The position numbers were made by a program, and so were the translations under genes. A stretch of 64,000 bases of DNA, taken from IMG/VR virus record IMGVR_UViG_3300010885_076238, positions 62,001 through 126,000 of that record, one strand, 5' to 3'. Below the pieces are notes generated by a model. It did not search any database and had not been told where the DNA came from. It worked only from the letters and a program-made list of their open reading frames with translations. Shown here one piece after another: positions 2,969-62,894 of the stretch; the first letter of the stretch is position 1; the number at the start of each line of letters is the position of its first letter.

Positions 2969-2993
2969 AATATTTTTTTGTGTCTTTCGTTAT
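2969..2993 (+). promoter_or_regulatory. phage promoter motif AATATT-N13-CGTTAT
   Basis: One of about 30 fixed-spacing copies; followed by AAGGAG and ATG 3015. Confidence 0.7.
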
Positions 2994-3014
2994 CATATCA
3001 ACCAAGGAGATAAA

Positions 3015-3221
3015 ATGAAGACATCCAAGTTGATTAGCTACATGAAAGAAAGAGCGACTTTTGAAAATGTTGGTTGGGAAATGCCCGATGAGATTCTTGA
3101 AAATTTCTTTGTTCAAAAGGGAACTAGAATCTTTTTTGGTGTGATCCTTGACGATTTGGGCAACATTCTTAAAGATCAGCAACAGCCGGAGTTTTACACT
3201 TCTTATTGTGAGAGAAATTAA
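3015..3221 (+). CDS. hypothetical protein
   Basis: AAGGAG RBS and promoter motif upstream. Confidence 0.7.
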   Translation: MKTSKLISYMKERATFENVGWEMPDEILENFFVQKGTRIFFGVILDDLGNILKDQQQPEFYTSYCERN

Positions 3222-3316
3222 ATAATGACAAGGACAAGGATATTCCTTTTTATTGTTTTTGTAATGGGTTGTGCATTTGCTTATTTGATTGATTCAAAGT
3301 AAATAGAAAGAAAAAA

Positions 3317-4591
3317 ATGTTTGAAAAGTTATCTGATCTTGTTCAAGACTTGAAGGCCACTTCATCTTCAAATTCTAAAGTTTCAATTATTAGAGATTAT
3401 TTAAAAGAAGACAAAGACCTTCAAAATATTTTTTATTATGTCTATCATCCCTTTTATCAATTTTATGTTTCAAGTGATAACTGTAAGAAAAATAAAGAAT
3501 TAAAAAATAAGCAGCATGACTGTATTTTTAAATTGTTAGATGATCTTAGAAATAGAAAAATCACTGGTCACGATGCTGTTAGTGCCATTAATGGGTATTT
3601 AGAAAATCATGATCACGTTTCGCTTGTTCATGATATCTTGGACAAAGATTTAAAAATTAGAGCTGCCGATAAATTAATTAATAAAGCAATCCCCGGATTG
3701 ATCCCGGAATTTGAGGTTGCTTTAGCTGAGAAATACACACCGGAAATTATGAATCTCAATGAAGATTGGTATGCGAGTCATAAGCTCGACGGTTGCCGCT
3801 GTGTTTGTGTAGTCGATGATTCTGGTGTGGTGAGCATCTCAAGGCAGGGGAAAATTTTTACAACCTTGGGCTTGGTTGAAGATGCCATTAAAAACTTAAA
3901 CATTAAAAATGTTGTTTTTGACGGAGAGATTTGTCTACTTGATGAAAACGGAAAAGAAAGCTTTCAAGGAATAATGAAGCTTATTCGCAAGAAAGATCAT
4001 GTTATTCAAAACCCTGTTTATAAAATTTTTGATTTGCTAACTACAGGAGAATTTTATAATAAGAAAAGTGAAAGAAAACTATCTGATCGACTTGAATTTC
4101 TCAAGAGTGTTATCAAGGAAGATTCAAATCCTTGTTTGACTGTTTTAGAGCAAATTAAAATTAAAAATAACGAGCATTTTGAAGAGTTAACAAAGAAAGC
4201 AACAGATAGTGGGTGGGAAGGACTAATTCTCAGAAAAGACACAGGATACGCAGGAAAGAGGAGCAAGGATTTATTGAAGTATAAAAACTTCTTTGATGCT
4301 GAGTATGTTGTTGAAGACCTTGAATTCGGCCCGTTCAGATATGTTTTTGAAAACAAGGAAAAAGAAGAGATTATGCTTAGTTGTGCAACAATCAAGCATA
4401 AAGACAATGTCGTGAGAGTGGGCAGCGGCTTTACAATTGATCAAAGAAAGCATTATTACAAAAATCCTCAGGATCTTTTGGGAAAAACAATCAATGTTCA
4501 GTATTTTGAAGAAACCTTCAATCAAGAAGGAGGAATAAGTCTCAGGTTTCCTGTTGTTAAACACATTTATGAAAATGGTAGGGATACATAA
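3317..4591 (+). CDS. lig: ATP-dependent DNA ligase
   Basis: HKLDGCRC (I), FDGEI (III), KIFD (IIIa), WEGLILRK (IV), LLKYK (V), OB-fold VGSGFT and SLRFPV. Confidence 0.95.
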   Translation: MFEKLSDLVQDLKATSSSNSKVSIIRDYLKEDKDLQNIFYYVYHPFYQFYVSSDNCKKNKELKNKQHDCIFKLLDDLRNRKITGHDAVSAINGYLENHDHVSLVHDILDKDLKIRAADKLINKAIPGLIPEFEVALAEKYTPEIMNLNEDWYASHKLDGCRCVCVVDDSGVVSISRQGKIFTTLGLVEDAIKNLNIKNVVFDGEICLLDENGKESFQGIMKLIRKKDHVIQNPVYKIFDLLTTGEFYNKKSERKLSDRLEFLKSVIKEDSNPCLTVLEQIKIKNNEHFEELTKKATDSGWEGLILRKDTGYAGKRSKDLLKYKNFFDAEYVVEDLEFGPFRYVFENKEKEEIMLSCATIKHKDNVVRVGSGFTIDQRKHYYKNPQDLLGKTINVQYFEETFNQEGGISLRFPVVKHIYENGRDT

Positions 4592-4598
4592 ATATAAC

Positions 4599-4970
4599 AT
4601 GGAAGACATTGATGACTTTTGCCAAAGAATTAGAAATTTTGTGTTCGATAGAATTAGACACACCATAGCAAAGATGCTAAATATTGATGTCAATTCTTTA
4701 GACGACGCAGATAAATATATTTCTCAAAAAGAAACAATAATGATTTTTAATGATGTCGTAGAAAATTTTGATGGAAAAATTTCTCAAAAAAAAATTGTTA
4801 AAATTTGTGAAGACATAAATAAAAGAATTTTTAGTAACATTCTCAATAAGATGTCGATTGACGGAGATTTGGATTGTGCGTGGTCAGAGGCAGATCAGTC
4901 GTTTGTTTTTAAAGTTTCACAAGAGGGTCAAAAAAAGGGATTATCTATTCCCAAGATATTTGAAAAATGA
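4599..4970 (+). CDS. hypothetical protein
   Basis: ATG 4599 after ligase stop; ATAAATA at 4588-4594. Confidence 0.7.
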   Translation: MEDIDDFCQRIRNFVFDRIRHTIAKMLNIDVNSLDDADKYISQKETIMIFNDVVENFDGKISQKKIVKICEDINKRIFSNILNKMSIDGDLDCAWSEADQSFVFKVSQEGQKKGLSIPKIFEK

Positions 4971-5072
4971 AAAAGTTTTTTATATTGCTTCGTTTTGCCT
5001 TTAGTATTATAATGATATTTTATGGAATTATGTTGATTTCTTTTTTTACCTATAAAGAAATTATAGAAAAAT

Positions 5073-5309
5073 ATGCAAACCAATTATGAAGAAAAAGCTG
5101 CCTTCAAGGCTTTTTTTGTTGCTTTTTTTGCTCTTTTACTGATTTTAACAAGTGGAATTTATTTGAACTATAAATATCCACTTGTTCCGCCAATTTCAGA
5201 TGACCCAGTAAAAGCTGCGTACGATAAAAGTTCAAACAACAAAATTGAAATCAAAATAAATCAAATTGAAAAAAGATTAGATAAATTAGAGAAACTAAAG
5301 ATTAGATAA
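5073..5309 (+). CDS. small membrane protein
   Basis: One hydrophobic helix FFVAFFALLLILTSGIYL. Confidence 0.6.
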   Translation: MQTNYEEKAAFKAFFVAFFALLLILTSGIYLNYKYPLVPPISDDPVKAAYDKSSNNKIEIKINQIEKRLDKLEKLKIR

Positions 5310-7166: not shown

Positions 7167-7191
7167 AATAATAATTGGCTGATTCCGTTAT
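7167..7191 (+). promoter_or_regulatory. phage promoter motif AATAAT-N13-CGTTAT
   Basis: Exact consensus, upstream of the 7266-10502 operon. Confidence 0.7.
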
Positions 7192-10509: not shown

Positions 10510-11133
10510 ATGATATCTAGCATAAATACAAGCTATGATTCTTTATGCAGATTGTTTGATTTTAGTAACGGCAAAATTTCAAGTAATAAAAAATTATTAC
10601 TTAGTCTTGCAAGAAGAGGGAAGCCTAAGCCAAGTTACAAAACAAGCTTGTATGTTTACTTATGCAGTTGCACAAATAAGAATAATTGTCTTTACGACGA
10701 TGTTTTTAGCGAAAGCATTAGACAAATTAGACCAGACTGGTTTGTAAGAAGACAAGAAACAACAAGGAAGAAAAAAGAAAATCTAATAAAAATTGCAAAA
10801 AAGATGATGCCTAGACCTAATCATTCTGATGCCTCTTATAGAGATCTTTTTTCTTATACTAATAAAAATAGCAATGTTTATGACGAAGATTTTGATTCTA
10901 TTATCAGGAAACTCAGACCAGATTGGTTTTTTACTAGAACTCACTTATCGGAAATAAAGAAACAAAACATACTAAAATTAGCAAAAGAAAGAAAGCCTAA
11001 GCCTAGTAGAAATCATGTTCTTGGAATAGCAATCAAAAATTATACAAACAAAAGCAGCCCAGCCTATGATTCTAACTTTGAAGTTGAGTTAAAAAAACTC
11101 AGACCAGATTGGTTTAAAAATTCGGTAAAATAA
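10510..11133 (+). CDS. three-repeat protein (helicase-associated HA-like units)
   Basis: Three ~60-aa units ending TNKxxxxYDxxFxxxxxxxRPDWF; N-terminal YDSLCRLFDFS. Confidence 0.65.
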   Translation: MISSINTSYDSLCRLFDFSNGKISSNKKLLLSLARRGKPKPSYKTSLYVYLCSCTNKNNCLYDDVFSESIRQIRPDWFVRRQETTRKKKENLIKIAKKMMPRPNHSDASYRDLFSYTNKNSNVYDEDFDSIIRKLRPDWFFTRTHLSEIKKQNILKLAKERKPKPSRNHVLGIAIKNYTNKSSPAYDSNFEVELKKLRPDWFKNSVK

Positions 11134-11153
11134 TTTCTTGATCAATGCGTTAT
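11129..11153 (+). promoter_or_regulatory. phage promoter motif AATAAT-N13-CGTTAT
   Basis: Exact consensus, then AAGGAG and ATG 11173. Confidence 0.7.
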
Positions 11154-16944: not shown

Positions 16945-17098
16945 TTAAATTTCCCTAAAAAATAGAGCGGAGTTCAGTGTGCAGGCATGAATATACACTT
17001 ATCTTTTAGGTTTTTCAACAGCGATGTGAGCACATAAAATAATATTTTGCTCAAGACGTTGTGCATTTATCCGAAGACACCCAACAAAGGAAAAAACA

Positions 17099-19394: not shown

Positions 19395-19419
19395 AATAAT
19401 AAAAAATAAAGCTCGTTAT
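19395..19419 (+). promoter_or_regulatory. phage promoter motif, leaderless class
   Basis: AATAAT-N13-CGTTAT, 6 nt, then ATG 19426; no SD. Confidence 0.75.
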
Positions 19420-22412: not shown

Positions 22413-22437
22413 AATAATAATTTCTCTTAGACGTTAT
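22413..22437 (+). promoter_or_regulatory. phage promoter motif AATAAT-N13-CGTTAT
   Basis: Exact consensus, AGGAG 6 nt downstream. Confidence 0.75.
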
Positions 22438-22916: not shown

Positions 22917-23276
22917 ATGAAAGAAAAGCCTTTAATTTTTATCGATAAGATAGAAAAAATAGAGTTTTTTGATGTTTTAGTTGAAGATATTCATTCTGCT
23001 GGAGAAAAATCAAATCATCATTGTTTAGAGGGTAGTTCTAAATTAACCTACCATGAAGTTTGGGAGTGGATAAGTCGAGGTGGAGATTGGAGCTTCATCG
23101 TGACAGAGCATAACAACCCAGAGAAAGTTTTCATGCGTGGCTCTGCATATGAAGATATGGACGCTGCAAGAAAAGGGGAACACCAACTATCGTTGGGACA
23201 GGTAACAGATGCGGAACTTTCTGATCTGCAAAAATTATTACATAGAAAAAGAAAAGAACAATACGGAATCAAATAA
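22917..23276 (+). CDS. hypothetical protein
   Basis: Operon ORF. Confidence 0.65.
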   Translation: MKEKPLIFIDKIEKIEFFDVLVEDIHSAGEKSNHHCLEGSSKLTYHEVWEWISRGGDWSFIVTEHNNPEKVFMRGSAYEDMDAARKGEHQLSLGQVTDAELSDLQKLLHRKRKEQYGIK

Positions 23277-23316
23277 TAAAAAATCAACATCGTTATGTAA
23301 TTGAGGGAAATTTAAA

Positions 23317-25493: not shown

Positions 25494-25545
25494 GGAAGTC
25501 AACAAATTACTTAAAATAATAATAAATTAGAGTCGTTATCTGATT

Positions 25546-27434: not shown

Positions 27435-28043
27435 TTGACAAATAACATATCTTTGATTGGAGATGTTCATGGTAAATATAAAAGATACCATGAAATAATT
27501 AGGGAGAAAGATCGCCATGAATACACTGTGCAAATTGGAGATTTTGGATTCAATTATGAAACTTTAAAAAATGTTGATCCAAATAATCATAAAATTATAG
27601 GTGGCAACCATGATAATTATGATAAAATAATAAATACTCCACATTATCTTGGAGACTATGGAAATACAACTCTAAATGGAGTAGAGTTTTTCTTTTATAG
27701 AGGGGCTTATAGCATAGACCGCCAATATCGCACAATTGGAGTGGATTGGTGGGAATCTGAGCAATTAAAAATTGAACAGTTCATGGAGGCAAGAGAACTC
27801 TATAGAAGCATCAAGCCAAAAATTGTTATAACTCATGATTGTCCTGAGTGCATTGTTCCATATTACATAGGTTTTCAAGGAAAAATATATCAGAACATAA
27901 CCAGTTGGGGATTGAATGAATTACTTAATATTCATCAACCAGAACTTTGGATTCATGGTCATTTTCATCAATCCAAAACCACAAAATATGGAAATACAAA
28001 CTTTATTTGTTTGAATGAATTAGAAGTTTTTAAAATTAAATAA
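27435..28043 (+). CDS. calcineurin-like metallophosphoesterase
   Basis: GDVHG, QIGDFG, GGNHD, ITHDCP, HGHFH. Confidence 0.92.
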   Translation: MTNNISLIGDVHGKYKRYHEIIREKDRHEYTVQIGDFGFNYETLKNVDPNNHKIIGGNHDNYDKIINTPHYLGDYGNTTLNGVEFFFYRGAYSIDRQYRTIGVDWWESEQLKIEQFMEARELYRSIKPKIVITHDCPECIVPYYIGFQGKIYQNITSWGLNELLNIHQPELWIHGHFHQSKTTKYGNTNFICLNELEVFKIK

Positions 28044-28103
28044 TAAATTGTGCAGATCGTTATCTCTGCAAGTTGAAAAATAATCTGCAAAAGGAATTAA
28101 AAT

Positions 28104-28328: not shown

Positions 28329-28372
28329 AAATAAAAATTTATTCAAGCCGTTATGTGTATAAGGAGACAAAA

Positions 28373-33294: not shown

Positions 33295-33319
33295 AATAAT
33301 AATTTATTATATGCGTTAT
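33295..33319 (+). promoter_or_regulatory. phage promoter motif AATAAT-N13-CGTTAT
   Basis: Exact consensus, AGGAGG 5 nt downstream. Confidence 0.75.
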
Positions 33320-40149: not shown

Positions 40150-40194
40150 CTAATATTATTTTGCCGCAATCGTTATCTGTGTAAGGAGAACAAC

Positions 40195-41390: not shown

Positions 41391-41421
41391 AATAAAAATT
41401 AATGAGCGTCGTTATCAAACT

Positions 41422-42345: not shown

Positions 42346-42830
42346 TGCACAAAAACTCTTCTAAATTAAATAAAAATTTAATCAAAGACGCTCAACAATT
42401 TGATGTTGTTAGGAAAGAATTCGAAAAAAAAGAAAAAAAATTCAAAAAAGATTTTAGTAGGATAAAAGACAGGGTTGACTTTATTTTAAATAAACTAGCA
42501 AATGTTTACAAAATGTGCATCGGCAGTTGGGGCTTTAGTAATTGTTGCTACGATGACCTCAATTCAAAATACGACTCTAGCGGTTATTTTGTGAGTGCCA
42601 TGTTGCTAGAAAAGGACTTTATAGTTTGTGTTAATTTTAATATAGATCGCAAAAGTCATATTGGTGAGTTTGATTCTAAAATAATTATAAATGATGGCGA
42701 ATACGAGCCATTCAAACTTTATCAAGACGAGGTGAGTTCGCATGTGCAATTTCCTACAAGATGGATTTTTGAAGACTTTGAAAAAGAACTTGAGAAAAGC
42801 AAAATTTTATACGAAATAGGCAAAAAATAA
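42342..42830 (+). CDS. hypothetical protein
   Basis: GTGA-coupled ORF. Confidence 0.6.
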   Translation: MMHKNSSKLNKNLIKDAQQFDVVRKEFEKKEKKFKKDFSRIKDRVDFILNKLANVYKMCIGSWGFSNCCYDDLNSKYDSSGYFVSAMLLEKDFIVCVNFNIDRKSHIGEFDSKIIINDGEYEPFKLYQDEVSSHVQFPTRWIFEDFEKELEKSKILYEIGKK

Positions 42831-42869
42831 TAATTTTGTTTGCGAGTTATACCAATAAGGAGACATGAA

Positions 42870-43825: not shown

Positions 43826-43896
43826 AGCACAAAATAATAACTGAGCAGGTTCGTTATACCATATATGACTGCCACGGCTCATAACAAGGAATAAAA

Positions 43897-45390: not shown

Positions 45391-45415
45391 AATAATAATT
45401 TTGTAATGCCGTTAT
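45391..45415 (+). promoter_or_regulatory. phage promoter motif AATAAT-N13-CGTTAT (GCCGTTAT)
   Basis: Exact consensus, AGGAG 6 nt downstream. Confidence 0.75.
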
Positions 45416-47535: not shown

Positions 47536-48074
47536 TAAAAAATCATGGCTACCAATCCATCATGGCTACCAATCCTATAGATTTCAAAAAAGCAACGCTT
47601 AATTATGGCAAGGAAGCCATAGAAGGTGTTCTAGTAATTGCGAATGATCCAGCAATAACTAAACTAGATAAAAAGTCAAGCGTTAAGATTCCTAAAAAAA
47701 TATTCGTGCCTGTAAAGGAGTCTGTTTTTTACACGAATAGTCCTGCTCATATGAATGAAGTTCTTGAAAGATGCAAACAAAGCGATATGTTAGAATTGCT
47801 TAGTTATTTAGACTTATCCGTACCTTTTATAGATGATTATTTCTTTGACGGCGACTCAGGATTTATAGTTAATTTTTATCAGCCAGATCAAGGAGATTGT
47901 CTGGCAGATCAGCGTTATCATAAATGTCCAGTTTGTATTCAATTGCTTGACCCAATCGAATGGCTAAACAATTGGGATATGAGCGACGATGATAAAAATA
48001 AATGGATCGTCGCCATGATAAACCAAAACCTACCAGAAAATATTAAAAATAAACTGCTTTTGATAGGCCTTTAA
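47532..48074 (+). CDS. hypothetical protein with terminal LP-xN motif
   Basis: C-terminus NLPENIKNKLLL. Confidence 0.65.
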   Translation: MIKNHGYQSIMATNPIDFKKATLNYGKEAIEGVLVIANDPAITKLDKKSSVKIPKKIFVPVKESVFYTNSPAHMNEVLERCKQSDMLELLSYLDLSVPFIDDYFFDGDSGFIVNFYQPDQGDCLADQRYHKCPVCIQLLDPIEWLNNWDMSDDDKNKWIVAMINQNLPENIKNKLLLIGL

Positions 48075-48120
48075 TATTAATTATTAAAACGCGTTATCAA
48101 GTATCAAGCAAGGACAACAA

Positions 48121-50315: not shown

Positions 50316-50630
50316 ATGACTAGTATTAGATTGATTACTTTTTATGAAGCCCCCGACTGCTGGGACATTGCAGAGGCCGATCTAGACAAAGAGATTGATG
50401 AACAATTAGATGAATATGTAGCCTCTAACATACAAAACATTACCAGTCCAGGCTTTGTTGTAAAAGATTTTGAAGTGCCAGAAAATTTAGAAAAACAACT
50501 AATTCTAGATATTTGTAACGGAAAGTCTATGGCAGTTTGGATCGAGAAATCCGTGGATTTTCATAGCGAATATTACCAAAATTGGATCTTTTTCAAGAAT
50601 AAAGAAAACTCTTGGGAAGACCTAAAATAA
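50316..50630 (+). CDS. hypothetical protein
   Basis: Operon ORF. Confidence 0.65.
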   Translation: MTSIRLITFYEAPDCWDIAEADLDKEIDEQLDEYVASNIQNITSPGFVVKDFEVPENLEKQLILDICNGKSMAVWIEKSVDFHSEYYQNWIFFKNKENSWEDLK

Positions 50631-50656
50631 TAATTAACCCAACGCGTTATGCCACT

Positions 50657-50899: not shown

Positions 50900-50901
50900 A
50901 T

Positions 50902-51638: not shown

Positions 51639-51737
51639 AATAAAAAAGCTCAATCTCTTGTCTCAAGTTCATTTTTGGCACTACAACCCCTGAAATAATA
51701 TTTGATCTGATCCGCTATCCTCAATGAAGGTAACACC

Positions 51738-52691: not shown

Positions 52692-52733
52692 AATAATAAT
52701 TAATATCATTGGTTATCAAGCAGAGGAACAAAT

Positions 52734-53552
52734 ATGACCCCACAAGAAGCATATTCTGAATTAATTAATCTTTTCAATAGCTCCCGACGAGGAATCGTCT
52801 TTTACTTTAAAGATTTTATTAATGCACCCGAACACAAAAAAGAAGTAGATGAACTAAAAAAAATAATTATTCAAGACCCCTTCACCGCTTCAGATTTTGC
52901 AATAAGTTCCGGCGAAAGATGGATCGAAGCAGAAGAAATTATTAAAACAAATCCAAAAATATTAAGCCATTATTTTTGTATGTTGTTTACAAGGGAATTC
53001 AAAAGAAGATGGAATGAAGCAGAAGCAGATATTCTAAAAGGAACTCCTAATAGTGTTTGGGATTATTATAAACCTGTGCAGTATCATGTGTCAAACTCTT
53101 TCCCAGACAATGTTTGGATAGAAGCAGAACCAGTTTTTGAAAAGAAAATGAGCATCTTTCATCAATATGTTCTAACCACAAAAAAGCCCAACAAAACCTA
53201 TGAACAAAAAATATTAAATGATCCAAGTTCTAAATATAATCCCAAATACATCTATGACTACTCTTCCAAAGTTCTACAAAGCAGATGGAAAGAAGCAGAA
53301 CATATAATATTAAAAAATCCAGACTACGCAGCAAAATATTGCTCGAAATTTAAGATGGTAGTTCCAGAAGAAATTCATAACCAAATAGTTGCAGAAGTCG
53401 CCTTAACCGACAAATCTTCCTCTTTCAGAAAGAAATTTCTCCAAGATCAAACCAAAAGAAAAGAAAAATTTTTAGAATATCTCAAAGAACTTGTTAGTAG
53501 TAATGTTATTAACAAAGATAGCACAGTTGAAGAATTAATAAATAATATTTAA
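52734..53552 (+). CDS. helical-repeat protein, LP-HN-M family
   Basis: RWIEAE units; VPEEIHNQIVA; terminal TVEELINNI. Confidence 0.85.
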   Translation: MTPQEAYSELINLFNSSRRGIVFYFKDFINAPEHKKEVDELKKIIIQDPFTASDFAISSGERWIEAEEIIKTNPKILSHYFCMLFTREFKRRWNEAEADILKGTPNSVWDYYKPVQYHVSNSFPDNVWIEAEPVFEKKMSIFHQYVLTTKKPNKTYEQKILNDPSSKYNPKYIYDYSSKVLQSRWKEAEHIILKNPDYAAKYCSKFKMVVPEEIHNQIVAEVALTDKSSSFRKKFLQDQTKRKEKFLEYLKELVSSNVINKDSTVEELINNI

Positions 53553-53571
53553 TCCCAACCGTTATAACACT

Positions 53572-54441
53572 ATGACAACTCTAAAAATCCCCAAGTTCAG
53601 AAATGCCAAAAGAGCAGCAGAGTTTGCTGTTAAACACAAAGTTACACTAAACGAAGAAACAGAAAAATTAATAGCACAAGACGCTGTAGCGTCCTACAAC
53701 TACGCATATCACGTTAAAGGCAAATTTGAACTTGCTGAACCCTTAATCGCTAAAGATTTGCATTTAGCAGTAATCTACGCCATCTATATTCTAAAAGGTA
53801 GATTCTATCTGGCCGAAAAAATGATTGCAGAATCTATCACAGAATATGGCTTGAAAAAAGAAAATTTCTATAACGCACCAGCATTTAATTACGCAAGAAG
53901 TGTTTGCCAAGGAAGATTTGAACTATTAGAACCATTAATTATTAATGATCCTGATCTTTGCTATCATTACGCCGCAGATGTTATTGGAGGAAGATGGGAG
54001 GAAGGAGAACCAACAATAGCAAAAGATTTACAACTTTCTCTGAATTATGCAAGATATGTATTAGACGGAAGATTTGAACTAGCAGAACCCTTGCTTGCAC
54101 AAGACTCAGACTACGCTTTTGAATACGCATCAGATGTTATTAACAGATATATAACTAACTGCGACTACAGAGACAGAACAAATAAACTTGCAAAAAGATT
54201 TGAACTTGGTGAAGAAGCTATTTCTAAAAATATTAAGAAATTAGCAAAATATATCGATCTAACCAAACAAGAACTAACAGGCACTATTCACAACATGATG
54301 ATCGCAAGAAGCCTAACCGATGACCTTCTTTCAAAAACATACTTCGATTACATCAGCGATAATAAAAAAACACTACTAGAGTATTTGAGCAAATATCCCG
54401 AAAATATGACCGTAAAAGAAATAACCCAATCTCTTAGTTAA
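53572..54441 (+). CDS. helical-repeat protein, LP-HN-M family
   Basis: PKFRNAKRA N-motif; GRFELAE units; LTGTIHNMMIA; leaderless promoter at 53541-53565. Confidence 0.85.
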   Translation: MTTLKIPKFRNAKRAAEFAVKHKVTLNEETEKLIAQDAVASYNYAYHVKGKFELAEPLIAKDLHLAVIYAIYILKGRFYLAEKMIAESITEYGLKKENFYNAPAFNYARSVCQGRFELLEPLIINDPDLCYHYAADVIGGRWEEGEPTIAKDLQLSLNYARYVLDGRFELAEPLLAQDSDYAFEYASDVINRYITNCDYRDRTNKLAKRFELGEEAISKNIKKLAKYIDLTKQELTGTIHNMMIARSLTDDLLSKTYFDYISDNKKTLLEYLSKYPENMTVKEITQSLS

Positions 54442-54469
54442 TAATAATTATTCCAAACCGTTATGAGGT

Positions 54470-55174: not shown

Positions 55175-55182
55175 ATAAAATT

Positions 55183-55761: not shown

Positions 55762-55852
55762 ATTCATAAAAATAATTCTATATATGAATTAATAATAATT
55801 AATCAAATTCGTTATAACACTATGGCCCAAAACATGAACCCAAAGATAATCA

Positions 55853-56573: not shown

Positions 56574-56606
56574 AATATTAATAATTCCAAACCGTTATAC
56601 AGTATG
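56574..56606 (+). repeat. 33-bp promoter/start repeat identical to 57271-57303
   Basis: AATATTAATAATTCCAAACCGTTATACAGTATG at both sites; the last 23 nt also at 57927-57949. Confidence 0.9.
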
Positions 56607-57272
56607 AGATACGAAAAAGTAGAACCAAGAGAAATTAAATACTACTACAGCAACTATATTGAGAACGAAAATGTAACAAACTTCTTCGCACAAAAATACG
56701 CGGGAGATAAAACCACCACAGAAGAACTAAACCTACTACAAATTCTTATCTCAAATGTTACAAAAAATATACTTGAAAAAACAAAATCAACCCAAGATTG
56801 TATAGTATTTGACCCTACCACAGAAGATTTTTTTGTAACCGATCTAGATTCTTTCCAAAATCAACGCAGTTTTTTCTACCGAAGCGACTTTACTGATTTT
56901 TCAACTAAATGGAACGAAAATTGTTTACCAAGTTTACATAATGCAAAATTAATAAAAAATCGAAAAGTAGATACGCTGCTTTTTGATAATGTTCGACAAC
57001 ACCTAGATGAAAAAGTATTTAATGCTCTATTGGCTACCGCCGCTTTTTGCCAAGATGAACTCAAAAATTACACAAATGTTTCTTGCGGCTTCTTATTCAA
57101 ATTCTTATCCACTCAGCACTACAACGCACATAAAGAAAAATATTATGAGCAAATAAGTCAAGAATATTACATTTGCAAACAGTACGAAGGACAAGTTGTT
57201 ATAGCAAACAAAAAAACAGTAAATTTAATGCCTATCGAATGGAATGATGTAAATATTGATTATAACCCTTAA
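56604..57272 (+). CDS. hypothetical protein
   Basis: Leaderless; degenerate LDEKVFNALLA motif. Confidence 0.7.
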   Translation: MRYEKVEPREIKYYYSNYIENENVTNFFAQKYAGDKTTTEELNLLQILISNVTKNILEKTKSTQDCIVFDPTTEDFFVTDLDSFQNQRSFFYRSDFTDFSTKWNENCLPSLHNAKLIKNRKVDTLLFDNVRQHLDEKVFNALLATAAFCQDELKNYTNVSCGFLFKFLSTQHYNAHKEKYYEQISQEYYICKQYEGQVVIANKKTVNLMPIEWNDVNIDYNP

Positions 57273-57300
57273 TATTAATAATTCCAAACCGTTATACAGT

Positions 57301-57921
57301 ATGCAAGAATTCAACGAAATTATTATTAAGTCAATATTTAAGAAATTAAATATTGATTGCCTCATTCTAAGCCAAAAAGATTTCGTCGCTCACGATAAAG
57401 AAGATTGCTGGGTAAATCACAAACTAAGAAAGAAAATCTTCGCCCTAAAAAATGACAAAGTGTCCCTCGTAGAACTCAGCCTAAAAGACTCATTGCCCGA
57501 AAAAGTCTACAACTATATCTTGGCAGAATCCTTGGCTAAAGATTCTAAAGAATTATTAAAAAGCCCAAGAGAAATCCTTATGGATATGTGGAAAAACTTT
57601 CGTCCAGACCTAGATGATGAATTATTTGATGATGATTGCGGCAACGACGAAAGAAACGAAAGAAACGGAGCAATGGAATTTATAAGTTATTGGATCTTCT
57701 TGTATCTAGAAAATAATGAAGTAAAAATTAAATACTCTGTGCGTGACGTTAAACGCTCAGGATGGAACAACGAAGAAGTAAAAATTCCAGATATAATATC
57801 AATAAGAACATCAGAAGATGACCTCAAATACCAAGAAAAAACCAACCTTATAATCTCAGAAGATGACCTCAAAAACCCTATGTGGGAAAAAATCTGCTGC
57901 AAAGATAATTGGATAAAATAA
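57301..57921 (+). CDS. hypothetical protein (paralogue of 54470-55174)
   Basis: Leaderless ATG 57301; LPEKVYNYILA. Confidence 0.75.
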   Translation: MQEFNEIIIKSIFKKLNIDCLILSQKDFVAHDKEDCWVNHKLRKKIFALKNDKVSLVELSLKDSLPEKVYNYILAESLAKDSKELLKSPREILMDMWKNFRPDLDDELFDDDCGNDERNERNGAMEFISYWIFLYLENNEVKIKYSVRDVKRSGWNNEEVKIPDIISIRTSEDDLKYQEKTNLIISEDDLKNPMWEKICCKDNWIK

Positions 57922-57966
57922 TAATTATTCCAAACCGTTATACAGTATGAACCAAAAGGAAGCCAA

Positions 57967-58593
57967 ATGACTAAATACCCACCTATCGATCCAAAAGAAG
58001 TCTACGACAGCCTCTATACCCGTTCTAAGAATATTGTAGACTGGTATGAGTTTCTCGGAGATCACAATATCGAAACAATCTCATACTTAGACCCTTGCAC
58101 TATGGAATCTAAGGGAAATAAATTCGTTGTTTGTGACGATCCTGCCGGTGGACGTTCTCTTAAAATCCCTGAGCAACTTGCCCACGAAATTAGAGGAAAT
58201 CCTTATTTTGATGTTGAAGCAACCGATGCTGACCTTCCAAGAATCGAAGCCGCACTAGACAATCTCTCAGAACAAGATAAAGAAATTGTCGAAAAAGCAA
58301 AAGAATACGGCGACGGTTCTGGAAATAGAAACACAGAAGTTTCTCTCACCGTTAATCTATATTGCAATTGGGACGGCGATCTATTATTTCCAACAGTAAT
58401 CGTAGACGAAATAGCCAATCACGATACCCTCAAATATGGGGTAAATTGGGATAAAGCAAAAGAACTTGAACATAAGGCGAAAAAAGAAGTTCTTAATAAA
58501 GTCGCCCAATATAAGAACATCGTTATTAAAATCGCCACAGAACTTAAAATTAACTCACACGATGTTCATGAGTATATTATGGGATGGGGATGA
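57967..58593 (+). CDS. hypothetical protein
   Basis: AAGGA RBS; promoter at 57917-57941. Confidence 0.75.
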   Translation: MTKYPPIDPKEVYDSLYTRSKNIVDWYEFLGDHNIETISYLDPCTMESKGNKFVVCDDPAGGRSLKIPEQLAHEIRGNPYFDVEATDADLPRIEAALDNLSEQDKEIVEKAKEYGDGSGNRNTEVSLTVNLYCNWDGDLLFPTVIVDEIANHDTLKYGVNWDKAKELEHKAKKEVLNKVAQYKNIVIKIATELKINSHDVHEYIMGWG

Positions 58594-58717
58594 TGAAAAT
58601 TAGATTTCAAGATGAAATTATGCAAAAGCATTACGAGTCTTTAATAAAAGATGGGTATCATTGGAAAATAGCAGAAATCAAAACAATAAAAAGATTTGAA
58701 GAATATGACCAATAAGA

Positions 58718-59098
58718 TTACCCCAATGCTTTTTTAATTTGTCCACTATCCAACGCAGGACTTCTTAATTTCGCAACAACATAATCCCTAAGTTGCTTAC
58801 TACTCACTTTTCTCAGTTCTCCCACAATGCCATTGTTTTTTATCACAGGCAGTTCCATCAAATTATCCACGCCCAAAGGCTCTGTAGCATCGTAATACCT
58901 TCCATCGTAATAAATGAAAGCATGAGCATCATCTGCAAATAATTGACCCGATTTTAAATAATATTTAGCAGCCAATGCCCAATTATAACAATGACCACGA
59001 TTAATAATCTCTGGACTCATTCCAGAAAATATTTTTTCACTTATAATCGATAAATCAACCGATTCTAATATGTTGTAAAATTTATAAAAATTAATCAT
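58718..59098 (-). CDS. Cys-His-Asp (transglutaminase/papain-like) protein with capsid-targeting-like N-terminus
   Basis: MINFYKFYNILES; NRGHCYNWA, HAF, YYDA; ATAAATA on minus strand at 59105-59111. Confidence 0.6.
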   Translation of the reverse strand: MINFYKFYNILESVDLSIISEKIFSGMSPEIINRGHCYNWALAAKYYLKSGQLFADDAHAFIYYDGRYYDATEPLGVDNLMELPVIKNNGIVGELRKVSSKQLRDYVVAKLRSPALDSGQIKKALG

Positions 59099-59139
59099 CT
59101 TAATTATTTATCCAAGAATTTAATAATTGTAAATAATGA

Positions 59140-59676
59140 GTGGAAAAAAATATATCACTCATAGGAAATTGCCAAACAACAGCATTATGTAAGTTTCTCA
59201 GACAACTAAAATATAACGCTAAATGGCTATGCTTTGAAACAGAATGGATAAATTCCAATTGGCCCAAAAACCAATCATTGTTTCAAAATCAAATTCAACA
59301 TAATATCTTCGACCAAAACGATTGTGTAAACTTCCTAAAAATATCAGATATTATCATATTCCAACCAAATTACTTACATTGCAATGTAGTTGATAATTAT
59401 AAAAATGATACCGCCCAAACTATTACACTATCTCCCGTTTTTGTTAATAATTTAGATTACATCTTAGAAAAAGAATCAAAATATCAAACCAATGTTAAAA
59501 TATCCAGTATCATCAGCCAATACCCTAAAGAAAAATTGTACGTTATAAACGATAACCACCTATCAACACTACTAACACTAGAAATACTAAAACAAATAGC
59601 CAACTTGGCTAACCTGCAATTCTTCGACAATATCACCTACCAAGAATTAATAAAAATACAATACCCTAATTATTAA
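59140..59676 (+). CDS. WcbI-like polysaccharide-biosynthesis protein
   Basis: LIGNCQTTAL...DIIIFQP. Confidence 0.5.
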   Translation: MEKNISLIGNCQTTALCKFLRQLKYNAKWLCFETEWINSNWPKNQSLFQNQIQHNIFDQNDCVNFLKISDIIIFQPNYLHCNVVDNYKNDTAQTITLSPVFVNNLDYILEKESKYQTNVKISSIISQYPKEKLYVINDNHLSTLLTLEILKQIANLANLQFFDNITYQELIKIQYPNY

Positions 59677-59723
59677 TTTTCCCAAATCGTTATCTCATAT
59701 CAACCCGACATAAGGATAAAACC

Positions 59724-60035: not shown

Positions 60036-60594
60036 ATTTATTAATTATTGTGGGTTATCTACCCAAATCTAACCTTTTATAATATTTAGCTGTGGGAAAC
60101 TAACCCATCTGCACAAATTTTGGTTCACCTAATAAATTAAATAATGGCTAATATTTAATTATAAAAATAGGGTCTAGTTAAATTAAGTAATAAATTTATT
60201 AAAAAAGGTAGTGCTTAGACCCCCTTTATAATTATAACTAACTAACGGGGAAATATAGTTTTCTAATAAAATCTAAGGGTTTCTAGTAAAATCTAGGTAA
60301 AAACAATGTATATTACTAATTATGAGTATCTGAGTGCGTTATTGAGTGTATTATTGATGGGAGTTGGGTTGGGGCTTTCATTGAGTAAGCTATTTTTTGT
60401 TGAATAATTAAAAAATAAGTAGAAAATAATCTCTTCTGCACAAATTTTGGTAGAGATTATATAGAAAATTAATAAAAAATAGTTTTTACGATATTGGGTG
60501 GTACTTTTTTTAAAGTAAAAAGACACCTGATGTTTATTTTGTATCTGGTATAATAATATTTTGTCTTATTCGATATGGTATACCGGAGGATAGA
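60036..60594. other. putative replication origin / strand-asymmetry switch
   Basis: Longest largely non-coding AT-rich tract; C>G to the left, G>C to the right; contains direct repeats, palindromes and hairpins. Confidence 0.55.
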
Positions 60595-61341: not shown

Positions 61342-61829
61342 ATATATTGGGTAGAATTTTATTGATAATTCCTTTTTGTAAATTGTTATATGATTACGTT
61401 CCTTCCTTGGACTTTTATAGTCTTAATTATCCTCTTGGAGCGTGGCTATTAATTTTATTGGGTTTGATTTCAATTTTATTTAATATTAGTAGAATATTGG
61501 GTATAATTTACATATTGGTTGGGTATGGGTTATACAGTTATTTTATACAGAGTGATATTTATAGTTTGTGGCCGGTTGGTGGTTTAATTTTATTAATTAG
61601 ATCAGATGTTAGTAAGAAGGTTGTGGAGAAGGTTGTTCCTGTAAAGGAGAAGGCAGTTGAGAAGGTAGTTCCTGCAAAGAAGAAAGTTGTAGTTGAGAAG
61701 GTAGTTCCTGTAAAAATTAATAAAACGAAGTCTGATGAATATTGGGAGAGGTATGACGCTCGCAATAAAAAGAATTTGTTTTTTAACTTAAAAGACAAAT
61801 TTAATAAATTATTGGTAGTGGGTAGGTAG
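61338..61829 (+). CDS. membrane protein with EKVVP repeats
   Basis: 3-4 TM segments, then three EKVVP units. Confidence 0.7.
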   Translation: MNILGRILLIIPFCKLLYDYVPSLDFYSLNYPLGAWLLILLGLISILFNISRILGIIYILVGYGLYSYFIQSDIYSLWPVGGLILLIRSDVSKKVVEKVVPVKEKAVEKVVPAKKKVVVEKVVPVKINKTKSDEYWERYDARNKKNLFFNLKDKFNKLLVVGR

Positions 61830-61949
61830 TAAATTAAAAAAAATTAAGTGTGGTTTTTTGCGGGGAAAAGTGAGCTTTACAAGAAAAAAAATTGGGCTAA
61901 AATGTTTGTTGTGTTTACGGTAAAATTTTTTTCACATGGAGGCTAAATT

Positions 61950-62423
61950 ATGCCCGCTGGAAGACCAAAGGGATCGAGTGGAACTAACAAGAGTTCGATT
62001 ATTCGGGAATACATTAAAGCTAATCCCACAGCGACTACGAATGAAGTGATGGAGGCGTTGGGTCAGAAGGGCATTGAGGTTAGTCAAGCTCTTGTGGCTG
62101 GAGTACGTTCTAGGGAGATGCGTGGCCCTGGGAATAAGAGTCGCAAGCGTGGTGAGATCACGGTTAGCGAATTGAATAGTATTAATGCGATGGTGGAGAA
62201 GTTTGATGATCGTTCTGTAATTATGAATATTATAGACGACATGACGACCTTGATTAAGGAAATTGGTGGTATTGATCGTTTTGAAGAAGCGATGAAGGAG
62301 TTCCAGAATTGGAAGCCTGAGTCTGAATCTTTGAAGGCGGAAGCTGCTTCTGACATATCTGGTGATGACGATGATGAGGATTCGGATGATGATGAGGACG
62401 AGGATGAAGACGAGGACGAATGA
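61950..62423 (+). CDS. AT-hook + winged-helix nucleoid-type protein with acidic tail
   Basis: GRPKGS; NKSSIIREYIKANPTATTNEVMEAL...GIEVS; poly-D/E tail; TTTACA-N16-TAAAAT at 61876-61903; GGAGG. Confidence 0.7.
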   Translation: MPAGRPKGSSGTNKSSIIREYIKANPTATTNEVMEALGQKGIEVSQALVAGVRSREMRGPGNKSRKRGEITVSELNSINAMVEKFDDRSVIMNIIDDMTTLIKEIGGIDRFEEAMKEFQNWKPESESLKAEAASDISGDDDDEDSDDDEDEDEDEDE

Positions 62424-62425
62424 AT

Positions 62426-62623
62426 TGGGAAGTTTTCGCTGACTTCCCATAGTTAAGCCTTCGGGTTAGGATCGCGGGTAATCCTTTAATTAACTGCCGT
62501 AGAGTTTTTAGAAGTTTCTGTAAGACTGAAATCTTCTATTGTTGGTTGCACAAATTTTAATAAAGAATATACTAGGGCCATTTCTGTGATATACTTTACA
62601 GAAGTGGCCTTAGTATTTCTTTA
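62426..62623 (+). ncRNA. candidate structured RNA (several hairpins)
   Basis: 8-bp stem 62426-62449; cUUCGg-containing junction 62451-62495; 28-bp stem 62561-62623 with 3 G-U pairs. Confidence 0.4.
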
Positions 62624-62671
62624 AACCAAGTAGGCATCTCCTGATGTTTATTTACTCAAGGAAGGGTAGGT

Positions 62672-62857
62672 ATGTTTAGGAATGAGAAGATAGTTGTTTT
62701 GGATATAGTTGATAGGTGTCTTAAGTTGGAGGATGATCGTGGTCAGATAATAAGTTTGATTTTTATTAAGGGTGGAAAATTAATAATTAAGGGTGAGTTG
62801 AAAGTTTCAGATAGTTCGATAGAGGCTCCAGAGATTAATTACTTGGATAAAAAATAA
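62672..62857 (+). CDS. hypothetical protein
   Basis: Short ORF with purine-rich leader. Confidence 0.55.
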   Translation: MFRNEKIVVLDIVDRCLKLEDDRGQIISLIFIKGGKLIIKGELKVSDSSIEAPEINYLDKK

Positions 62858-62894
62858 AAATAATTATGTATCGTTATGGGGTAGGAGACAAAAA

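What the first reader, a model, noticed from the sequence alone, without database searches (positions are those of the whole stretch)
2969..62877. A fixed-spacing phage promoter AATAAT-N13-CGTTAT, about 30 copies, resembling a sigma28-type element
Seen: copies start at 2969, 6257, 7167, 11129, 17038, 19395, 22413, 23272, 25515, 28039, 28330, 33295, 40152, 41391, 42826, 43833, 45391, 48073, 50626, 51694, 52692, 53541, 54440, 55791, 56574, 57271, 57917, 59669, 60552 and 62853. All are on the + strand and at gene boundaries, with exactly 13 nt between boxes. Upstream variants are AATATT, AATAAA, AATTTT and ATTATT; downstream variants are CGTTGT, CGCTAT, CGATAT, AGTTAT and GGTTAT. In most copies an ATG or an AGGAG-like SD begins 5-7 nt after the box, placing the TSS there. 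Known: sigma28/FliA reads TAAAGTTT-N11-GCCGATAA. Several copies read TAAAATAA-N12-nnCGTTAT (GCCGTTAT at 45408). Inference: a phage-encoded group-3-like sigma factor, or a hijacked host alternative sigma, defines this regulon.
Basis: partly seen in the sequence, partly recalled or inferred. Interest (0 to 1): 0.78.

Follow-up and report, generated by a model that had tools for sequence, protein, structure and literature searches.

The report
Phage promoter regulon with its own sigma
An uncultured 204-kb freshwater phage carries about 96 copies of one fixed-spacing two-box signal placed just before its genes, which is almost certainly a phage-specific promoter, probably read by host RNA polymerase carrying a divergent sigma factor that the phage encodes just upstream of this window.

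Summary
All 30 listed copies are present, and a 31st lies at 47307. The whole 204-kb contig holds 96 copies on the + strand and 3 on the – strand, against 0-4 in shuffles. All lie between 54.9 and 166 kb.

The logo is AAAATAAT(W)nT, then C-G-T-T-A-T. The gap between the boxes is fixed at 13 nt. Eighty-one percent of copies sit in the 14% of the block that is non-coding.

- An ATG lies 4-7 nt after the box in 41 copies (leaderless type).
- A Shine-Dalgarno sequence starts 3-13 nt after it in 25 more.
- Three tRNA genes start 8-34 nt after it.

This fixes a transcription start about 6 nt after CGTTAT, so CGTTAT acts as a –10 box. Its invariant G at –11 excludes a housekeeping sigma-70.

The contig encodes one sigma-70-family protein ("sigma1", 337 aa), 3.8 kb upstream of the window. 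No phage RNA polymerase was detected. Related metagenomic phages keep the boxes at orthologous promoters, but the –10 box changes by lineage, and sigma1 evolves faster than its neighbours.

No transcript data exist, and the sigma assignment is an inference. This is a new member of a known kind: a phage-sigma regulon.

The parts
2969..2993 (+). motif copy AATATT-N13-CGTTAT; SD-led 68-aa gene follows
   Evidence: orthologous promoter in L010
6257..6281 (+). motif copy AATTTT-N13-CGTTAT; AGGGAG 6 nt after the box
7167..7191 (+). motif copy, exact; long leader (74 nt to the next ORF)
11129..11153 (+). motif copy, exact; AAGGAG 6 nt after the box; GATC in the spacer
17038..17062 (+). motif copy with CGTTGT
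19395..19419 (+). motif copy, exact; ATG 6 nt after the box (leaderless type; calpain-like protease gene)
22413..22437 (+). motif copy, exact; AGGAG 6 nt after the box
23272..23296 (+). motif copy, exact; SD-led 373-aa gene
25515..25539 (+). motif copy, exact; ATG 6 nt after the box (leaderless type, 321-aa gene)
28039..28063 (+). motif copy, exact; 40-nt leader; GATC in the spacer
28330..28354 (+). motif copy AATAAA-N13-CGTTAT; AAGGAG 6 nt after the box
33295..33319 (+). motif copy, exact; AGGAGG 5 nt after the box
40152..40176 (+). motif copy AATATT-N13-CGTTAT; AAGGAG 6 nt after the box
41391..41415 (+). motif copy AATAAA-N13-CGTTAT; ATG 6 nt after the box (leaderless type, 307-aa gene)
42826..42850 (+). 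motif copy with AGTTAT; AAGGAG 6 nt after the box
43833..43857 (+). motif copy, exact; 39-nt leader
45391..45415 (+). motif copy, exact (GCCGTTAT); AGGAG 6 nt after the box; second ligase-like gene
48073..48097 (+). motif copy AATATT-N13-CGTTAT; SD-led 338-aa gene
50626..50650 (+). motif copy, exact; ATG 6 nt after the box (leaderless type)
51694..51718 (+). motif copy with CGCTAT; SD-led 317-aa gene
52692..52716 (+). motif copy with GGTTAT; SD-led 272-aa gene
53541..53565 (+). motif copy, exact; ATG 6 nt after the box (leaderless type, 289-aa gene)
54440..54464 (+). motif copy, exact; ATG 5 nt after the box (leaderless type; member of a paralogous gene family)
55791..55815 (+). motif copy, exact
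56574..56598 (+). motif copy AATATT-N13-CGTTAT; ATG 5 nt after the box (leaderless type)
57271..57295 (+). motif copy AATATT-N13-CGTTAT; ATG 5 nt after the box (leaderless type; paralogue of the 54470 gene)
57917..57941 (+). motif copy, exact; the highest score in the window (30.6 bits)
59669..59693 (+). motif copy ATTATT-N13-CGTTAT; 30-nt leader
60552..60576 (+). motif copy with CGATAT (identical to the sigma-D-type core)
62853..62877 (+). motif copy AATAAA-N13-CGTTAT; AGGAG 5 nt after the box

Best explanation
The motif is the promoter of a phage-specific transcription class. That class covers most + strand genes between 54.9 and 166 kb of the contig: ligases, helicases, several tRNAs, and many small genes of unknown function.

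CGTTAT acts as the -10 element (-12 to -7). AAAATAAT(W)nT acts as a -35-like element (-33 to -23). Transcription starts at an A about 6 nt after CGTTAT.

About a quarter of the transcripts therefore begin at, or 1 nt from, the AUG and are leaderless. About a third begin right at the SD. Some begin with a 5' hairpin or a tRNA.

The most likely reader is host core RNA polymerase carrying the phage's own divergent sigma-70-family protein, sigma1. Sigma1 lies at contig 58185-59198, 3.8 kb upstream of the window. Its gene sits behind a copy of the motif, so sigma1 would amplify its own synthesis after an initial low level of expression.

A few conserved TTGACA-N16-TATAAT promoters mark the genes that the unmodified host enzyme reads first.

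What is shown: the motif itself, its placement, its conservation, and the existence of sigma1. What is inferred: the start site, the holoenzyme, and the timing.
For: Signal statistics:
- 96 + strand and 3 - strand sites, against 0-4 in shuffles.
- Spacing is fixed at 13 nt.
- 87 sites are independent.
- 81% of sites are intergenic in a block that is 86% coding.

Coupling to gene starts. The distance from the box to the ATG of an ORF of 40 or more codons is bimodal:
- 4-6 nt in 27 sites.
- 16-25 nt in 31 sites, with AGGAG in between.
- The figures are 28% and 32% of sites, against 2.4% and 5.7% at random positions.
- Only 4 of 28 leaderless-type genes have an alternative SD-led start downstream.

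The signal acts on transcription, not translation. tRNA-Lys, tRNA-Arg and tRNA-Ile begin 20, 34 and 8 nt after a box.

Orientation follows the gene. The two strong - strand copies form divergent pairs with + copies, and one of them faces a - strand gene 86 nt away.

It is not a sigma-70 promoter. G at -11 is present in 87 of 87 independent sites. Sigma-70-like promoters and terminators are not enriched in window 40-60 kb.

The candidate reader:
- Exactly one sigma-like gene was found.
- It hits Pfam Sigma70_r2 at 24.9 bits and phrog_351 'RNA polymerase sigma factor'.
- A profile search hits the PDB structures of sigma-H and SigF.
- The AlphaFold2 model (pLDDT 77) matches sigma-A chains of holoenzyme structures, with Foldseek E = 7e-5 and probability 1.0.
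- No T7-like or multisubunit RNA polymerase domains were found.

Comparative evidence:
- Orthologous promoters (g347, sigma1, UvdE, g68) keep both boxes in relatives.
- The -10 box shifts by lineage. It is CGTTAT here and in L017, K-GTT-R-T in L010, CGTATA in L018, and AGTTGTG in L012. In L018, CGTATA has 4 matches against 0.14 expected and CGTTAT has none. In the window the reverse holds.
- Sigma1 is 57/54/49/37% identical in L010/L017/L018/L012. The neighbouring genes are 61-84% identical.
- Sigma1's region-4-like end is the best conserved part (58-77%). Its region-2-like part diverges more (36-62%). This parallels the conserved AT-rich box and the drifting -10 box.
Against: - There is no direct evidence of transcription. 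No RNA run holding this phage was listed.
- Nothing links sigma1 physically to the motif.
- The sigma1 gene is preceded by the motif in this phage and in L010, L017, L018 and L012. If sigma1 is the only reader, something else must make the first molecules. Only a weak, chance-level TTTACT-N16-TATAGT lies upstream.
- The contig is 88% complete, so a second sigma or a polymerase could lie in the missing part. The L010 lineage does carry a second sigma-like gene.
- The host is unknown, so host alternative sigmas cannot be examined.
- The lineage comparison rests on few sites per relative.
Confidence: 0.6

Rival explanations
1. The motif is a promoter, but sigma1 does not read it. An unrecognised phage factor would redirect the host enzyme, in the manner of T4 MotA/AsiA, or an undetected phage polymerase or a second sigma would read it. 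The early alpha-CTD-like protein and the AAA+ proteins are candidate helpers. Sigma1, itself a product of this regulon, would then serve a later class of promoters.
For: - The sigma1 gene lies behind a motif copy in every relative examined. This is the arrangement expected of a cascade: class 1 makes the sigma for class 2.
- The upstream box is centred near -29, with a 13-nt gap to the -10 box. That resembles the geometry of the T4 MotA box (own knowledge).
- A conserved early alpha-CTD-like gene sits behind a sigma-70-type promoter.
- Two large proteins (828 and 765 aa) remain unexplained.
- The contig is only 88% complete.
Against: - G at -11 is invariant. This is incompatible with a sigma-70 -10 element, which sigma appropriation retains.
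- No RNA polymerase domains were found, and no second sigma.
- No other distinctive bipartite motif was found upstream of the remaining genes. Only cTATAAT and the SD are enriched there. Sigma1 would therefore have no visible promoter class of its own.
Confidence: 0.2
2. The phage hijacks a host alternative sigma, of sigma-28/FliA or ECF type, to read the motif.
For: - The geometry is identical to sigma-28 promoters, and the core shares C-G and T-A with GCCGATAA/GCCGATAT.
- CGT-type -10 boxes are typical of ECF sigmas, and the L018 variant CGTATA equals the B. subtilis sigma-W box. These consensus sequences are from my own knowledge.
- One window copy (60552) reads CGATAT.
Against: - T replaces the conserved A of CGATAA in 85 of 87 independent sites.
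- No AAC -35 element is present.
- The -10 box changes between closely related phages across all orthologous promoters at once. This fits a reader that evolves with the phage.
- The phage lineage universally carries its own sigma.
- Relying on a stress or flagellar sigma for about 96 promoters would tie infection to the state of the host.
Confidence: 0.1
3. The motif is not a promoter. It would be a repeated intergenic element of another kind: an RNA processing or stability site, a translation signal, a duplication remnant, or a strand-polar DNA motif.
For: - No transcript data exist.
- Some copies share conserved spacers. One subclass is TTCCAAAC in window 50-60 kb; another is TTTCGATCCAGTT at 148-166 kb. 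These suggest spread by duplication.
- The AATAATAA run supplies stop codons for the upstream gene.
Against: - 87 of 96 copies are independent by their flanks.
- The two boxes are not complementary, and the spacer varies, so no RNA structure links them.
- Copies precede tRNA genes, so the signal is not a translation signal.
- In SD-led genes the box lies upstream of a normal SD.
- A strand-polar DNA motif would not sit at a fixed 5-6 nt from start codons.
- Paralogous genes that are only 30-35% identical keep nearly identical motif copies. The motif is under stronger selection than the proteins.
Confidence: 0.05

Closest known systems
Phage-encoded sigma regulons: Bacillus phage SPO1 gp28 (middle) and gp33/34 (late); phiEco32 gp36 and phage 7-11
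   Same: A lytic phage without its own polymerase encodes a divergent sigma-70-family protein. That sigma redirects host core enzyme to dozens of phage promoters with a non-host consensus. A few host-type promoters serve the earliest genes. Sources: own knowledge; PMC4331800 and PMC13401047 found; the jumbo-phage overview PMC7824862, read.
   Different: - The sigma has no relative in GenBank phages and passes no curated subfamily model.
- The consensus is new: AAAATAAT-N11-nnCGTTAT.
- The copy number is very high, at about 96.
- Many transcripts would be leaderless.
- The sigma gene lies behind its own promoter type. In SPO1, gene 28 lies behind host-type early promoters.
Sigma-28 / FliA / sigma-D promoters (TAAAGTTT-N11-GCCGATAA; TAAA-N15-GCCGATAT)
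   Same: The box positions are identical: -33 to -26 and -14 to -7. Both have an A-rich -35 beginning (T/A)AAA. C-12, G-11, T-9 and A-8 are shared (logo; consensus sequences from own knowledge). Sigma1 family members weakly hit the FliA_WhiG model: 17 of 25, best E = 3.3e-6.
   Different: - T stands at -10 where sigma-28 promoters have a conserved A.
- The -35 box reads ATAAT where sigma-28 has GTTT.
- Sigma1 scores 21 bits against a cut-off of 189.6.
- Sigma1 carries a 95-113-residue N-terminal domain and a disordered 50-residue linker.
ECF (group 4) sigma promoters, e.g. B. subtilis sigma-W TGAAAC-N16-CGTATA
   Same: Both have a CGT-type -10 box. The L018 relative uses exactly CGTATA. TIGR02937 is the commonest weak hit for the family (20 of 25 members).
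   Different: - No AAC motif is present in the -35 box.
- The sigma1 model aligns over the full length of sigma-A chains, including the parts N-terminal to region 2 and between regions 2 and 4. ECF sigmas lack these parts.
- The score is 22.3 bits against a cut-off of 42.9.
T4 middle promoters (MotA box at -30 plus a sigma-70 -10 element; sigma appropriation)
   Same: The upstream box is centred near -29/-30, replacing a -35 hexamer, and lies about 12-13 nt from the -10 element. The class switches on non-structural genes and tRNAs, with dozens of copies.
   Different: The -10 element here is not TAnnnT, since G-11 is invariant. MotA and AsiA homologues were not searched for. A sigma gene is present instead.

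Membership tests
Bacterial-type promoter (functional class) | Primary transcript 5' ends 5-8 nt downstream of the -10 element | not testable with these tools
   No RNA run holding this sequence was listed. The start is inferred only from ATGs and SD sequences at fixed distances.
Bacterial-type promoter (functional class) | Upstream of genes, co-oriented with them, mostly intergenic, and far above chance | tested here: met
   There are 96 + and 3 - sites, 81% are intergenic, and 3 tRNA genes follow a copy.
Housekeeping sigma-70 promoter | -10 hexamer TAnnnT with A at -11, and a TTGACA-like -35 at 17 +/- 1 nt | tested here: not met
   G at -11 in 87 of 87 sites and C at -12 in 81 of 87. The upstream box is 13 nt away and reads AATAAT.
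Sigma-28 (FliA/WhiG/sigma-D) promoter | TAAA-type -35 and GCCGATAA/T -10 separated as TAAAGTTT-N11-GCCGATAA | tested here: inconclusive
   The geometry is identical, and 4 of the 6 core -10 bases are shared with GATAA-type boxes (5 of 6 with CGATAT). However, the conserved A is T in 85 of 87 sites and the -35 box lacks GTTT. The consensus sequences are recalled from the literature.
FliA/WhiG sigma subfamily (protein) | Scores above the curated cut-off of TIGR02479 | tested here: not met
   21.0 bits against 189.6.
ECF sigma (group 4) | Only sigma-2 and sigma-4 domains; AAC -35 and CGT -10; scores above the TIGR02937 cut-off | tested here: not met
   22.3 bits against 42.9. The model has extra N-terminal and central helical parts and aligns along full sigma-A chains. 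A CGT -10 box is present but no AAC.
Sigma-70 superfamily (protein sigma1) | Region 2 fold and sequence signature | tested here: met
   PF04542 scores 24.9 bits in the six-frame search against a cut-off of 24, and 23.2 bits on the ORF. Other support: phrog_351, a profile hit to sigma-H 3mzy at E = 1.2e-4, and Foldseek to sigma-A chains at E = 7e-5, probability 1.0.
Sigma-70 superfamily (protein sigma1) | Region 4 helix-turn-helix at the C-terminus | tested here: inconclusive
   There is no Pfam r4 or r4_2 hit on sigma1. The C-terminal 60 residues are the most conserved part and are modelled as three helices. The alignment to SigF runs to chain residue 240.
Sigma-70 superfamily (protein sigma1) | Binds core RNA polymerase and confers promoter specificity | not testable with these tools
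Biochemistry is needed.
Single-subunit (T7-like) phage polymerase promoter | A phage gene with the PF00940 domain, and a continuous ~20-bp conserved promoter running into +1 | tested here: not met
   There is no PF00940 match, although the control genomes cannot ring for this family. The motif is bipartite with a variable spacer.
T4-type middle promoter (sigma appropriation) | Activator box near -30 plus a sigma-70-type -10; MotA and AsiA homologues | tested here: not met
   A box near -29 is present, but the -10 element is not sigma-70 type. MotA and AsiA homologues were not searched for.

The most novel reading that the evidence does not exclude
The motif might not be read by a simple sigma swap. 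It could be read by a previously undescribed phage transcription apparatus. In that reading the fast-evolving sigma1, its translationally adjacent AAA+ partner, and the early free-standing alpha-CTD-like protein would together rebuild host polymerase into an enzyme that recognises a G-11 type -10 box. That enzyme would be specialised for starting exactly at AUG, producing leaderless mRNAs on a genome-wide scale. A variant of this reading is that an unrecognised polymerase in the unexplained 765-828-aa proteins, or in the missing 12% of the genome, is the true reader.
Probability: 0.12. Interest if true: 0.75.

Novelty: new member of a known kind. Interest (0 to 1): 0.45.

Why it matters
If confirmed, this would be one of the largest and cleanest phage-sigma regulons known. 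It has about 96 near-identical promoters in one uncultured freshwater phage, with a new consensus and a sigma family that has no cultured representative.

Three things make it useful:
- The relatives form a natural series of sigma and promoter pairs (CGTTAT, CGTATA, GTTGTG). These could be used to work out how region 2 reads a non-A base at -11.
- It could supply orthogonal sigma and promoter pairs for synthetic biology.
- It is a case where a phage appears to make a large share of its early or middle mRNAs leaderless.

It also allows gene starts and operons to be annotated in a genome where about 80% of proteins have no known family.

Tried and rejected
- RNA evidence. No RNA run was listed. 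The seven runs that hold the sequence are DNA metagenomes kept as contigs. Read laying was therefore not used, because it could not show 5' ends.
- Protein-DNA complex of sigma1 with a 46-bp promoter. The job was counted but not folded, so it gives no evidence.
- GenBank phages. There is no DNA match and no tblastn match to sigma1.
- IMG/VR pattern scans. Only single chance matches per contig were found. No other record there shows the regulon, though the window's own record and near copies of it may be left out.
- Whole-record scan of relatives. Only one distant 533-kb record was held, and it has no match.
- My own EM motif finder on the relatives' upstream regions gave nothing usable with 24-61 sequences. 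The relatives' motifs were read from orthologous promoters instead.
- A second promoter class for the remaining genes. Only cTATAAT and SD k-mers are enriched. A listing of -10-like hexamers was too noisy to interpret.
- The weak Sigma70_r4 hit at window 14742-14816 belongs to an HNH/HTH homing-endonuclease-like ORF, not to a sigma.
- The sigma-like gene 'sig2' of the L010 lineage has no homologue here.
- The two large - strand proteins. The Atlas gave only weak leads to ADP-ribosyltransferase domains, with scores below 0.9 and no polymerase.
- Structural genes. No Gp23-type capsid was found, and PHROG scans of 25 larger proteins outside the block found tail-fibre-like, helicase and sugar-modification genes but no capsid or terminase. 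The temporal label 'middle' is therefore an inference.

Full report
**What the window is.** The window is bases 62001-126000 of a single 204,311-bp IMG/VR virus contig. The contig has 34.7% G+C and a CheckV completeness estimate of 88%. It has no near relative among GenBank phages at the DNA level. The DNA occurs in freshwater metagenomes. Most of its proteins match no family. Those recognised in and around the window are two ATP-dependent ligases, a T4-type RNA ligase, helicases, a ClpX-like ATPase, HNH endonucleases and a calpain-like protease.

**The observation.**
- The exact pattern occurs 15 times in the window, all on the + strand, against 0.03 expected.
- With one mismatch it occurs 30 times against 0.9 expected.
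- A 28-nt weight matrix built from the 30 sites and iterated over the whole contig finds 96 sites on the + strand and 3 on the - strand at 12 bits or more. First-order Markov shuffles give 0-4.
- The sites are confined to 54.9-166 kb.
- Clustering by flank and spacer identity leaves 87 independent sites, so this is not a recently copied repeat.
- The spacing is rigid. N13 gives 89 + strand hits, N12 gives 1 and N14 gives 5. The apparent hits at N10 and N16 are the same sites read out of register in the AATAATAAT run.

**The logo.** I set the last T of CGTTAT to -7. The 87 independent sites then read as follows:
- A-33 (61/87), A-32 (76), A-31 (86), A-30 (86), T-29 (87), A-28 (80), A-27 (75), T-26 (66), W-25, T-23 (69).
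- A variable stretch follows.
- T-13 (52), C-12 (81), G-11 (87), T-10 (85), T-9 (87), A-8 (84), T-7 (86), and not-T at -6.
- T at -1 (52), A at +1 (51) and G at +3 (58).

**Why it is a promoter.**
- Seventy-eight of the 96 copies lie mostly in intergenic DNA, although the block is 86% coding.
- The distance from the end of the box to the ATG of a downstream ORF of at least 40 codons is sharply bimodal. It is 4-6 nt in 27 sites and 16-25 nt in 31 sites, with an AGGAG-type SD in between. That is 28% and 32% of sites, against 2.4% and 5.7% at random positions in the same block.
- Counting any ATG at 4-7 nt or any SD at 3-13 nt, 66 of 96 sites qualify (25 of 31 in the window), against 11% of random positions.
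- Of 28 genes whose ATG lies 4-7 nt after the box, only 4 have an alternative in-frame start with an SD further down. These genes must be translated from an mRNA that begins at or next to the AUG. This places the transcription start 5-7 nt after CGTTAT, the normal distance from a -10 hexamer.
- Three + strand tRNA genes (Lys, Arg and Ile-tat) begin 20, 34 and 8 nt after a box. The signal therefore acts on transcription, not translation.
- The two strong - strand copies (contig 156640 and 157775) lie back to back with + copies. One of them faces a - strand gene 86 nt away.
- Paralogous genes in window 54.4-58.6 kb are only 30-35% identical in protein, yet they keep nearly identical motif copies.
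- In window 40-60 kb, neither sigma-70-like promoters (99 found, 79 +/- 10 expected) nor intrinsic terminators (16 found, 12 +/- 4 expected) are enriched. The motif is the only strong signal there.

**Why it is not a host housekeeping promoter.** G at -11 is invariant and C at -12 nearly so. A sigma-70 -10 element requires A at -11 (established knowledge). The phage does carry a handful of textbook host promoters:
- TTGACA-N16-TATAAT at contig 54476, 134994 and 141385.
- Near-perfect versions at 49388, 36160, 43896, 60469 and 142913.
- The promoters in front of the alpha-CTD-like gene and the ~80-aa gene are conserved at orthologous positions in relatives.

Upstream regions that lack the motif are enriched only for cTATAAT (24 of 117, 6.4 expected) and for the SD. 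The genome therefore has two visible promoter classes.

**Who reads it.** No T7-like or multisubunit RNA polymerase domain was found. The contig encodes exactly one sigma-like protein, sigma1. It lies at contig 58185-59198 (337 aa), 3.8 kb upstream of the window. The evidence that it is a sigma factor is:
- Sigma70_r2 at 24.9 bits and phrog_351 'RNA polymerase sigma factor'.
- Weak sub-threshold hits to the sigma70-ECF and FliA/WhiG models in 20 and 17 of 25 family members.
- Profile hits to the solved structures of sigma-H and SigF.
- An AlphaFold2 model (mean pLDDT 77) whose best Foldseek matches are sigma-A chains in Thermus and Mycobacterium holoenzyme structures, over nearly its whole length (E = 7e-5, probability 1.0). 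A SigB chain is also among the matches.

The model shows a confident N-terminal domain (residues 1-113), region-2-like and central helices, a disordered stretch (222-270), and a three-helix C-terminal domain. Sigma1 is followed 6 nt later by a conserved AAA+ gene.

**Relatives.** Sigma1 has 24 homologues, all from metagenomes and none from GenBank phages. The flanking regions are syntenic: ClpX-like, alpha-CTD-like, AAA+, g347, a - strand 231-aa gene, sigma1, AAA+, UvdE, RNA ligase, DNA ligase. At orthologous promoters both boxes are kept, but the -10 box differs by lineage:

| Lineage | Sigma1 identity | -10 box |
|---|---|---|
| This phage | - | CGTTAT |
| L017 | 54% | CGTTAT |
| L010 | 57% | TGTTAT, GGTTGT, TGTTAA, GGTTAT |
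| L018 | 49% | CGTATA |
| L012 | 37% | AGTTGTG |

- In L018, CGTATA has 4 matches against 0.14 expected and the CGTTAT form has none. In the window the reverse holds: 30 matches against 1.
- Sigma1 diverges much faster than its neighbours. It is 57/54/49/37% identical in L010/L017/L018/L012. Over the same four, g347 is 84/80/69/61% and UvdE is 74/81/78/70%.
- Within sigma1 the region-4-like end is the best conserved part (58-77%). The region-2-like part drifts more (36-62%). This parallels the conserved AT-rich box and the drifting -10 box.
The fast-evolving, always-present phage sigma is the obvious candidate. This is an inference from few sites per relative.

**The main difficulty.** The sigma1 gene itself sits behind a motif copy (contig 58130), and it does so in every relative examined. 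There are two readings:
- Sigma1 amplifies its own synthesis after a first trickle. Only a weak, chance-level TTTACT-N16-TATAGT lies upstream.
- Something else reads the motif first, and sigma1 serves a later class.

I found no separate motif that such a later class could use. I therefore prefer self-amplification, but the cascade remains the main rival.

**Comparison with known systems** (consensus sequences from my own knowledge).
- *Sigma-28.* The box positions coincide exactly with TAAAGTTT-N11-GCCGATAA. CGTTAT differs from the B. subtilis sigma-D core CGATAT at one base, but that base is the conserved A. Sigma1 fails the FliA/WhiG model by a wide margin.
- *ECF sigmas.* The CGT start of the box, and the L018 variant CGTATA, equal ECF-type -10 boxes (sigma-W). 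However, there is no AAC -35 box, and the sigma1 model is not a two-domain ECF protein.
- *T4 middle promoters.* The position of the upstream box resembles the MotA box, but the -10 element is not sigma-70 type.
- *Function.* The closest analogues are the phage-sigma regulons of SPO1, phiEco32 and 7-11, and the sigma-encoding, polymerase-less jumbo phages described in PMC7824862.
- *Literature.* Searches found no description of this consensus.

**Verdict.** The promoter reading is strongly supported by indirect evidence. The assignment to the phage's own sigma is the best available explanation (about 0.6) but is untested. The sigma-28 label describes the geometry, not family membership. This is a new member of a known kind of system. 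Its notable features are its size, its many predicted leaderless transcripts, and a natural series of co-varying sigma and promoter pairs.

Noticed in passing
contig 148.5-165.6 kb (L007:2575-19640), outside the window: About 13 motif copies are followed, from about +3, by a conserved hairpin, GGCCG-CGATTGAGA-CGGCC. It has compensatory variants (GGCAG/CTGCC in 4 copies). No Rfam family matches. It could be a 5' stabiliser or a protein-binding (boxB-like) element on these transcripts. It overlaps a possible MAAIETA peptide start in some copies but not all.
   Followed up: partly
contig 49405-49722 (L005:9405-9722), outside the window: [quoted passage not shown] It lies behind a sigma-70-type promoter and is followed by an AAA+ gene. 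The pair is conserved in all relatives examined. It may act as a decoy or adaptor for UP-element or activator contacts of the host enzyme.
   Followed up: partly
contig 132840-133015 (L006:6840-7015), outside the window: A group I intron (RF00028, 57.6 bits) begins 37 nt after the box of the motif copy at contig 132779.
   Followed up: no
window 53094-53065 (- strand): A perfect TTGACA-N18-TATAAT lies antisense inside a + strand gene. It could be a host-type antisense promoter or a chance match.
   Followed up: no
window 50626-59693 and contig 148-166 kb: The spacers fall into subclasses. One is (A/T)TTCCAAAC, in seven window copies. The other is TTTCGATCCAGTT, in about 20 copies downstream of the window. 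GATC sits at -21 in 10 of 96 sites and somewhere in the spacer in 17 of 96. These may be sub-regulons, a second binding site, methylation-sensitive promoters, or shared ancestry.
   Followed up: partly
window 30050-32536 (-), 34149-36446 (-), 36453-37133 (-): Three - strand genes interrupt the + strand regulon. The two large ones (828 and 765 aa) match no Pfam or PHROG family. They give only weak Atlas leads to ADP-ribosyltransferase (ART-PolyVal) domains.
   Followed up: partly
window 54470-58593: A family of four paralogous genes of unknown function (about 206-234 aa, 30-35% identical). Each has its own near-identical motif copy, and most are of the leaderless type.
   Followed up: partly
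contig 183-187 kb (L008, L009), outside the window: The phage encodes a tmRNA (tag GTNSYAMAA) and 13 tRNAs. The - strand tRNA cluster uses sigma-70-type promoters rather than the motif. A tRNA nucleotidyltransferase gene lies nearby.
   Followed up: no
L010:19856-20728 (relative, NCBI metagenome contig): The L010/L011 lineage carries a second sigma-like gene (290 aa, weak r2 and r4 hits) just before the g68 promoter. It has no homologue in this contig.
   Followed up: partly
window 14481-15206: A 241-aa ORF with a weak Sigma70_r4-like helix-turn-helix is an HNH/HTH homing-endonuclease-like protein, not a sigma factor. Neighbouring ORFs at 11173-13796 carry integrase-repeat-like motifs.
   Followed up: yes
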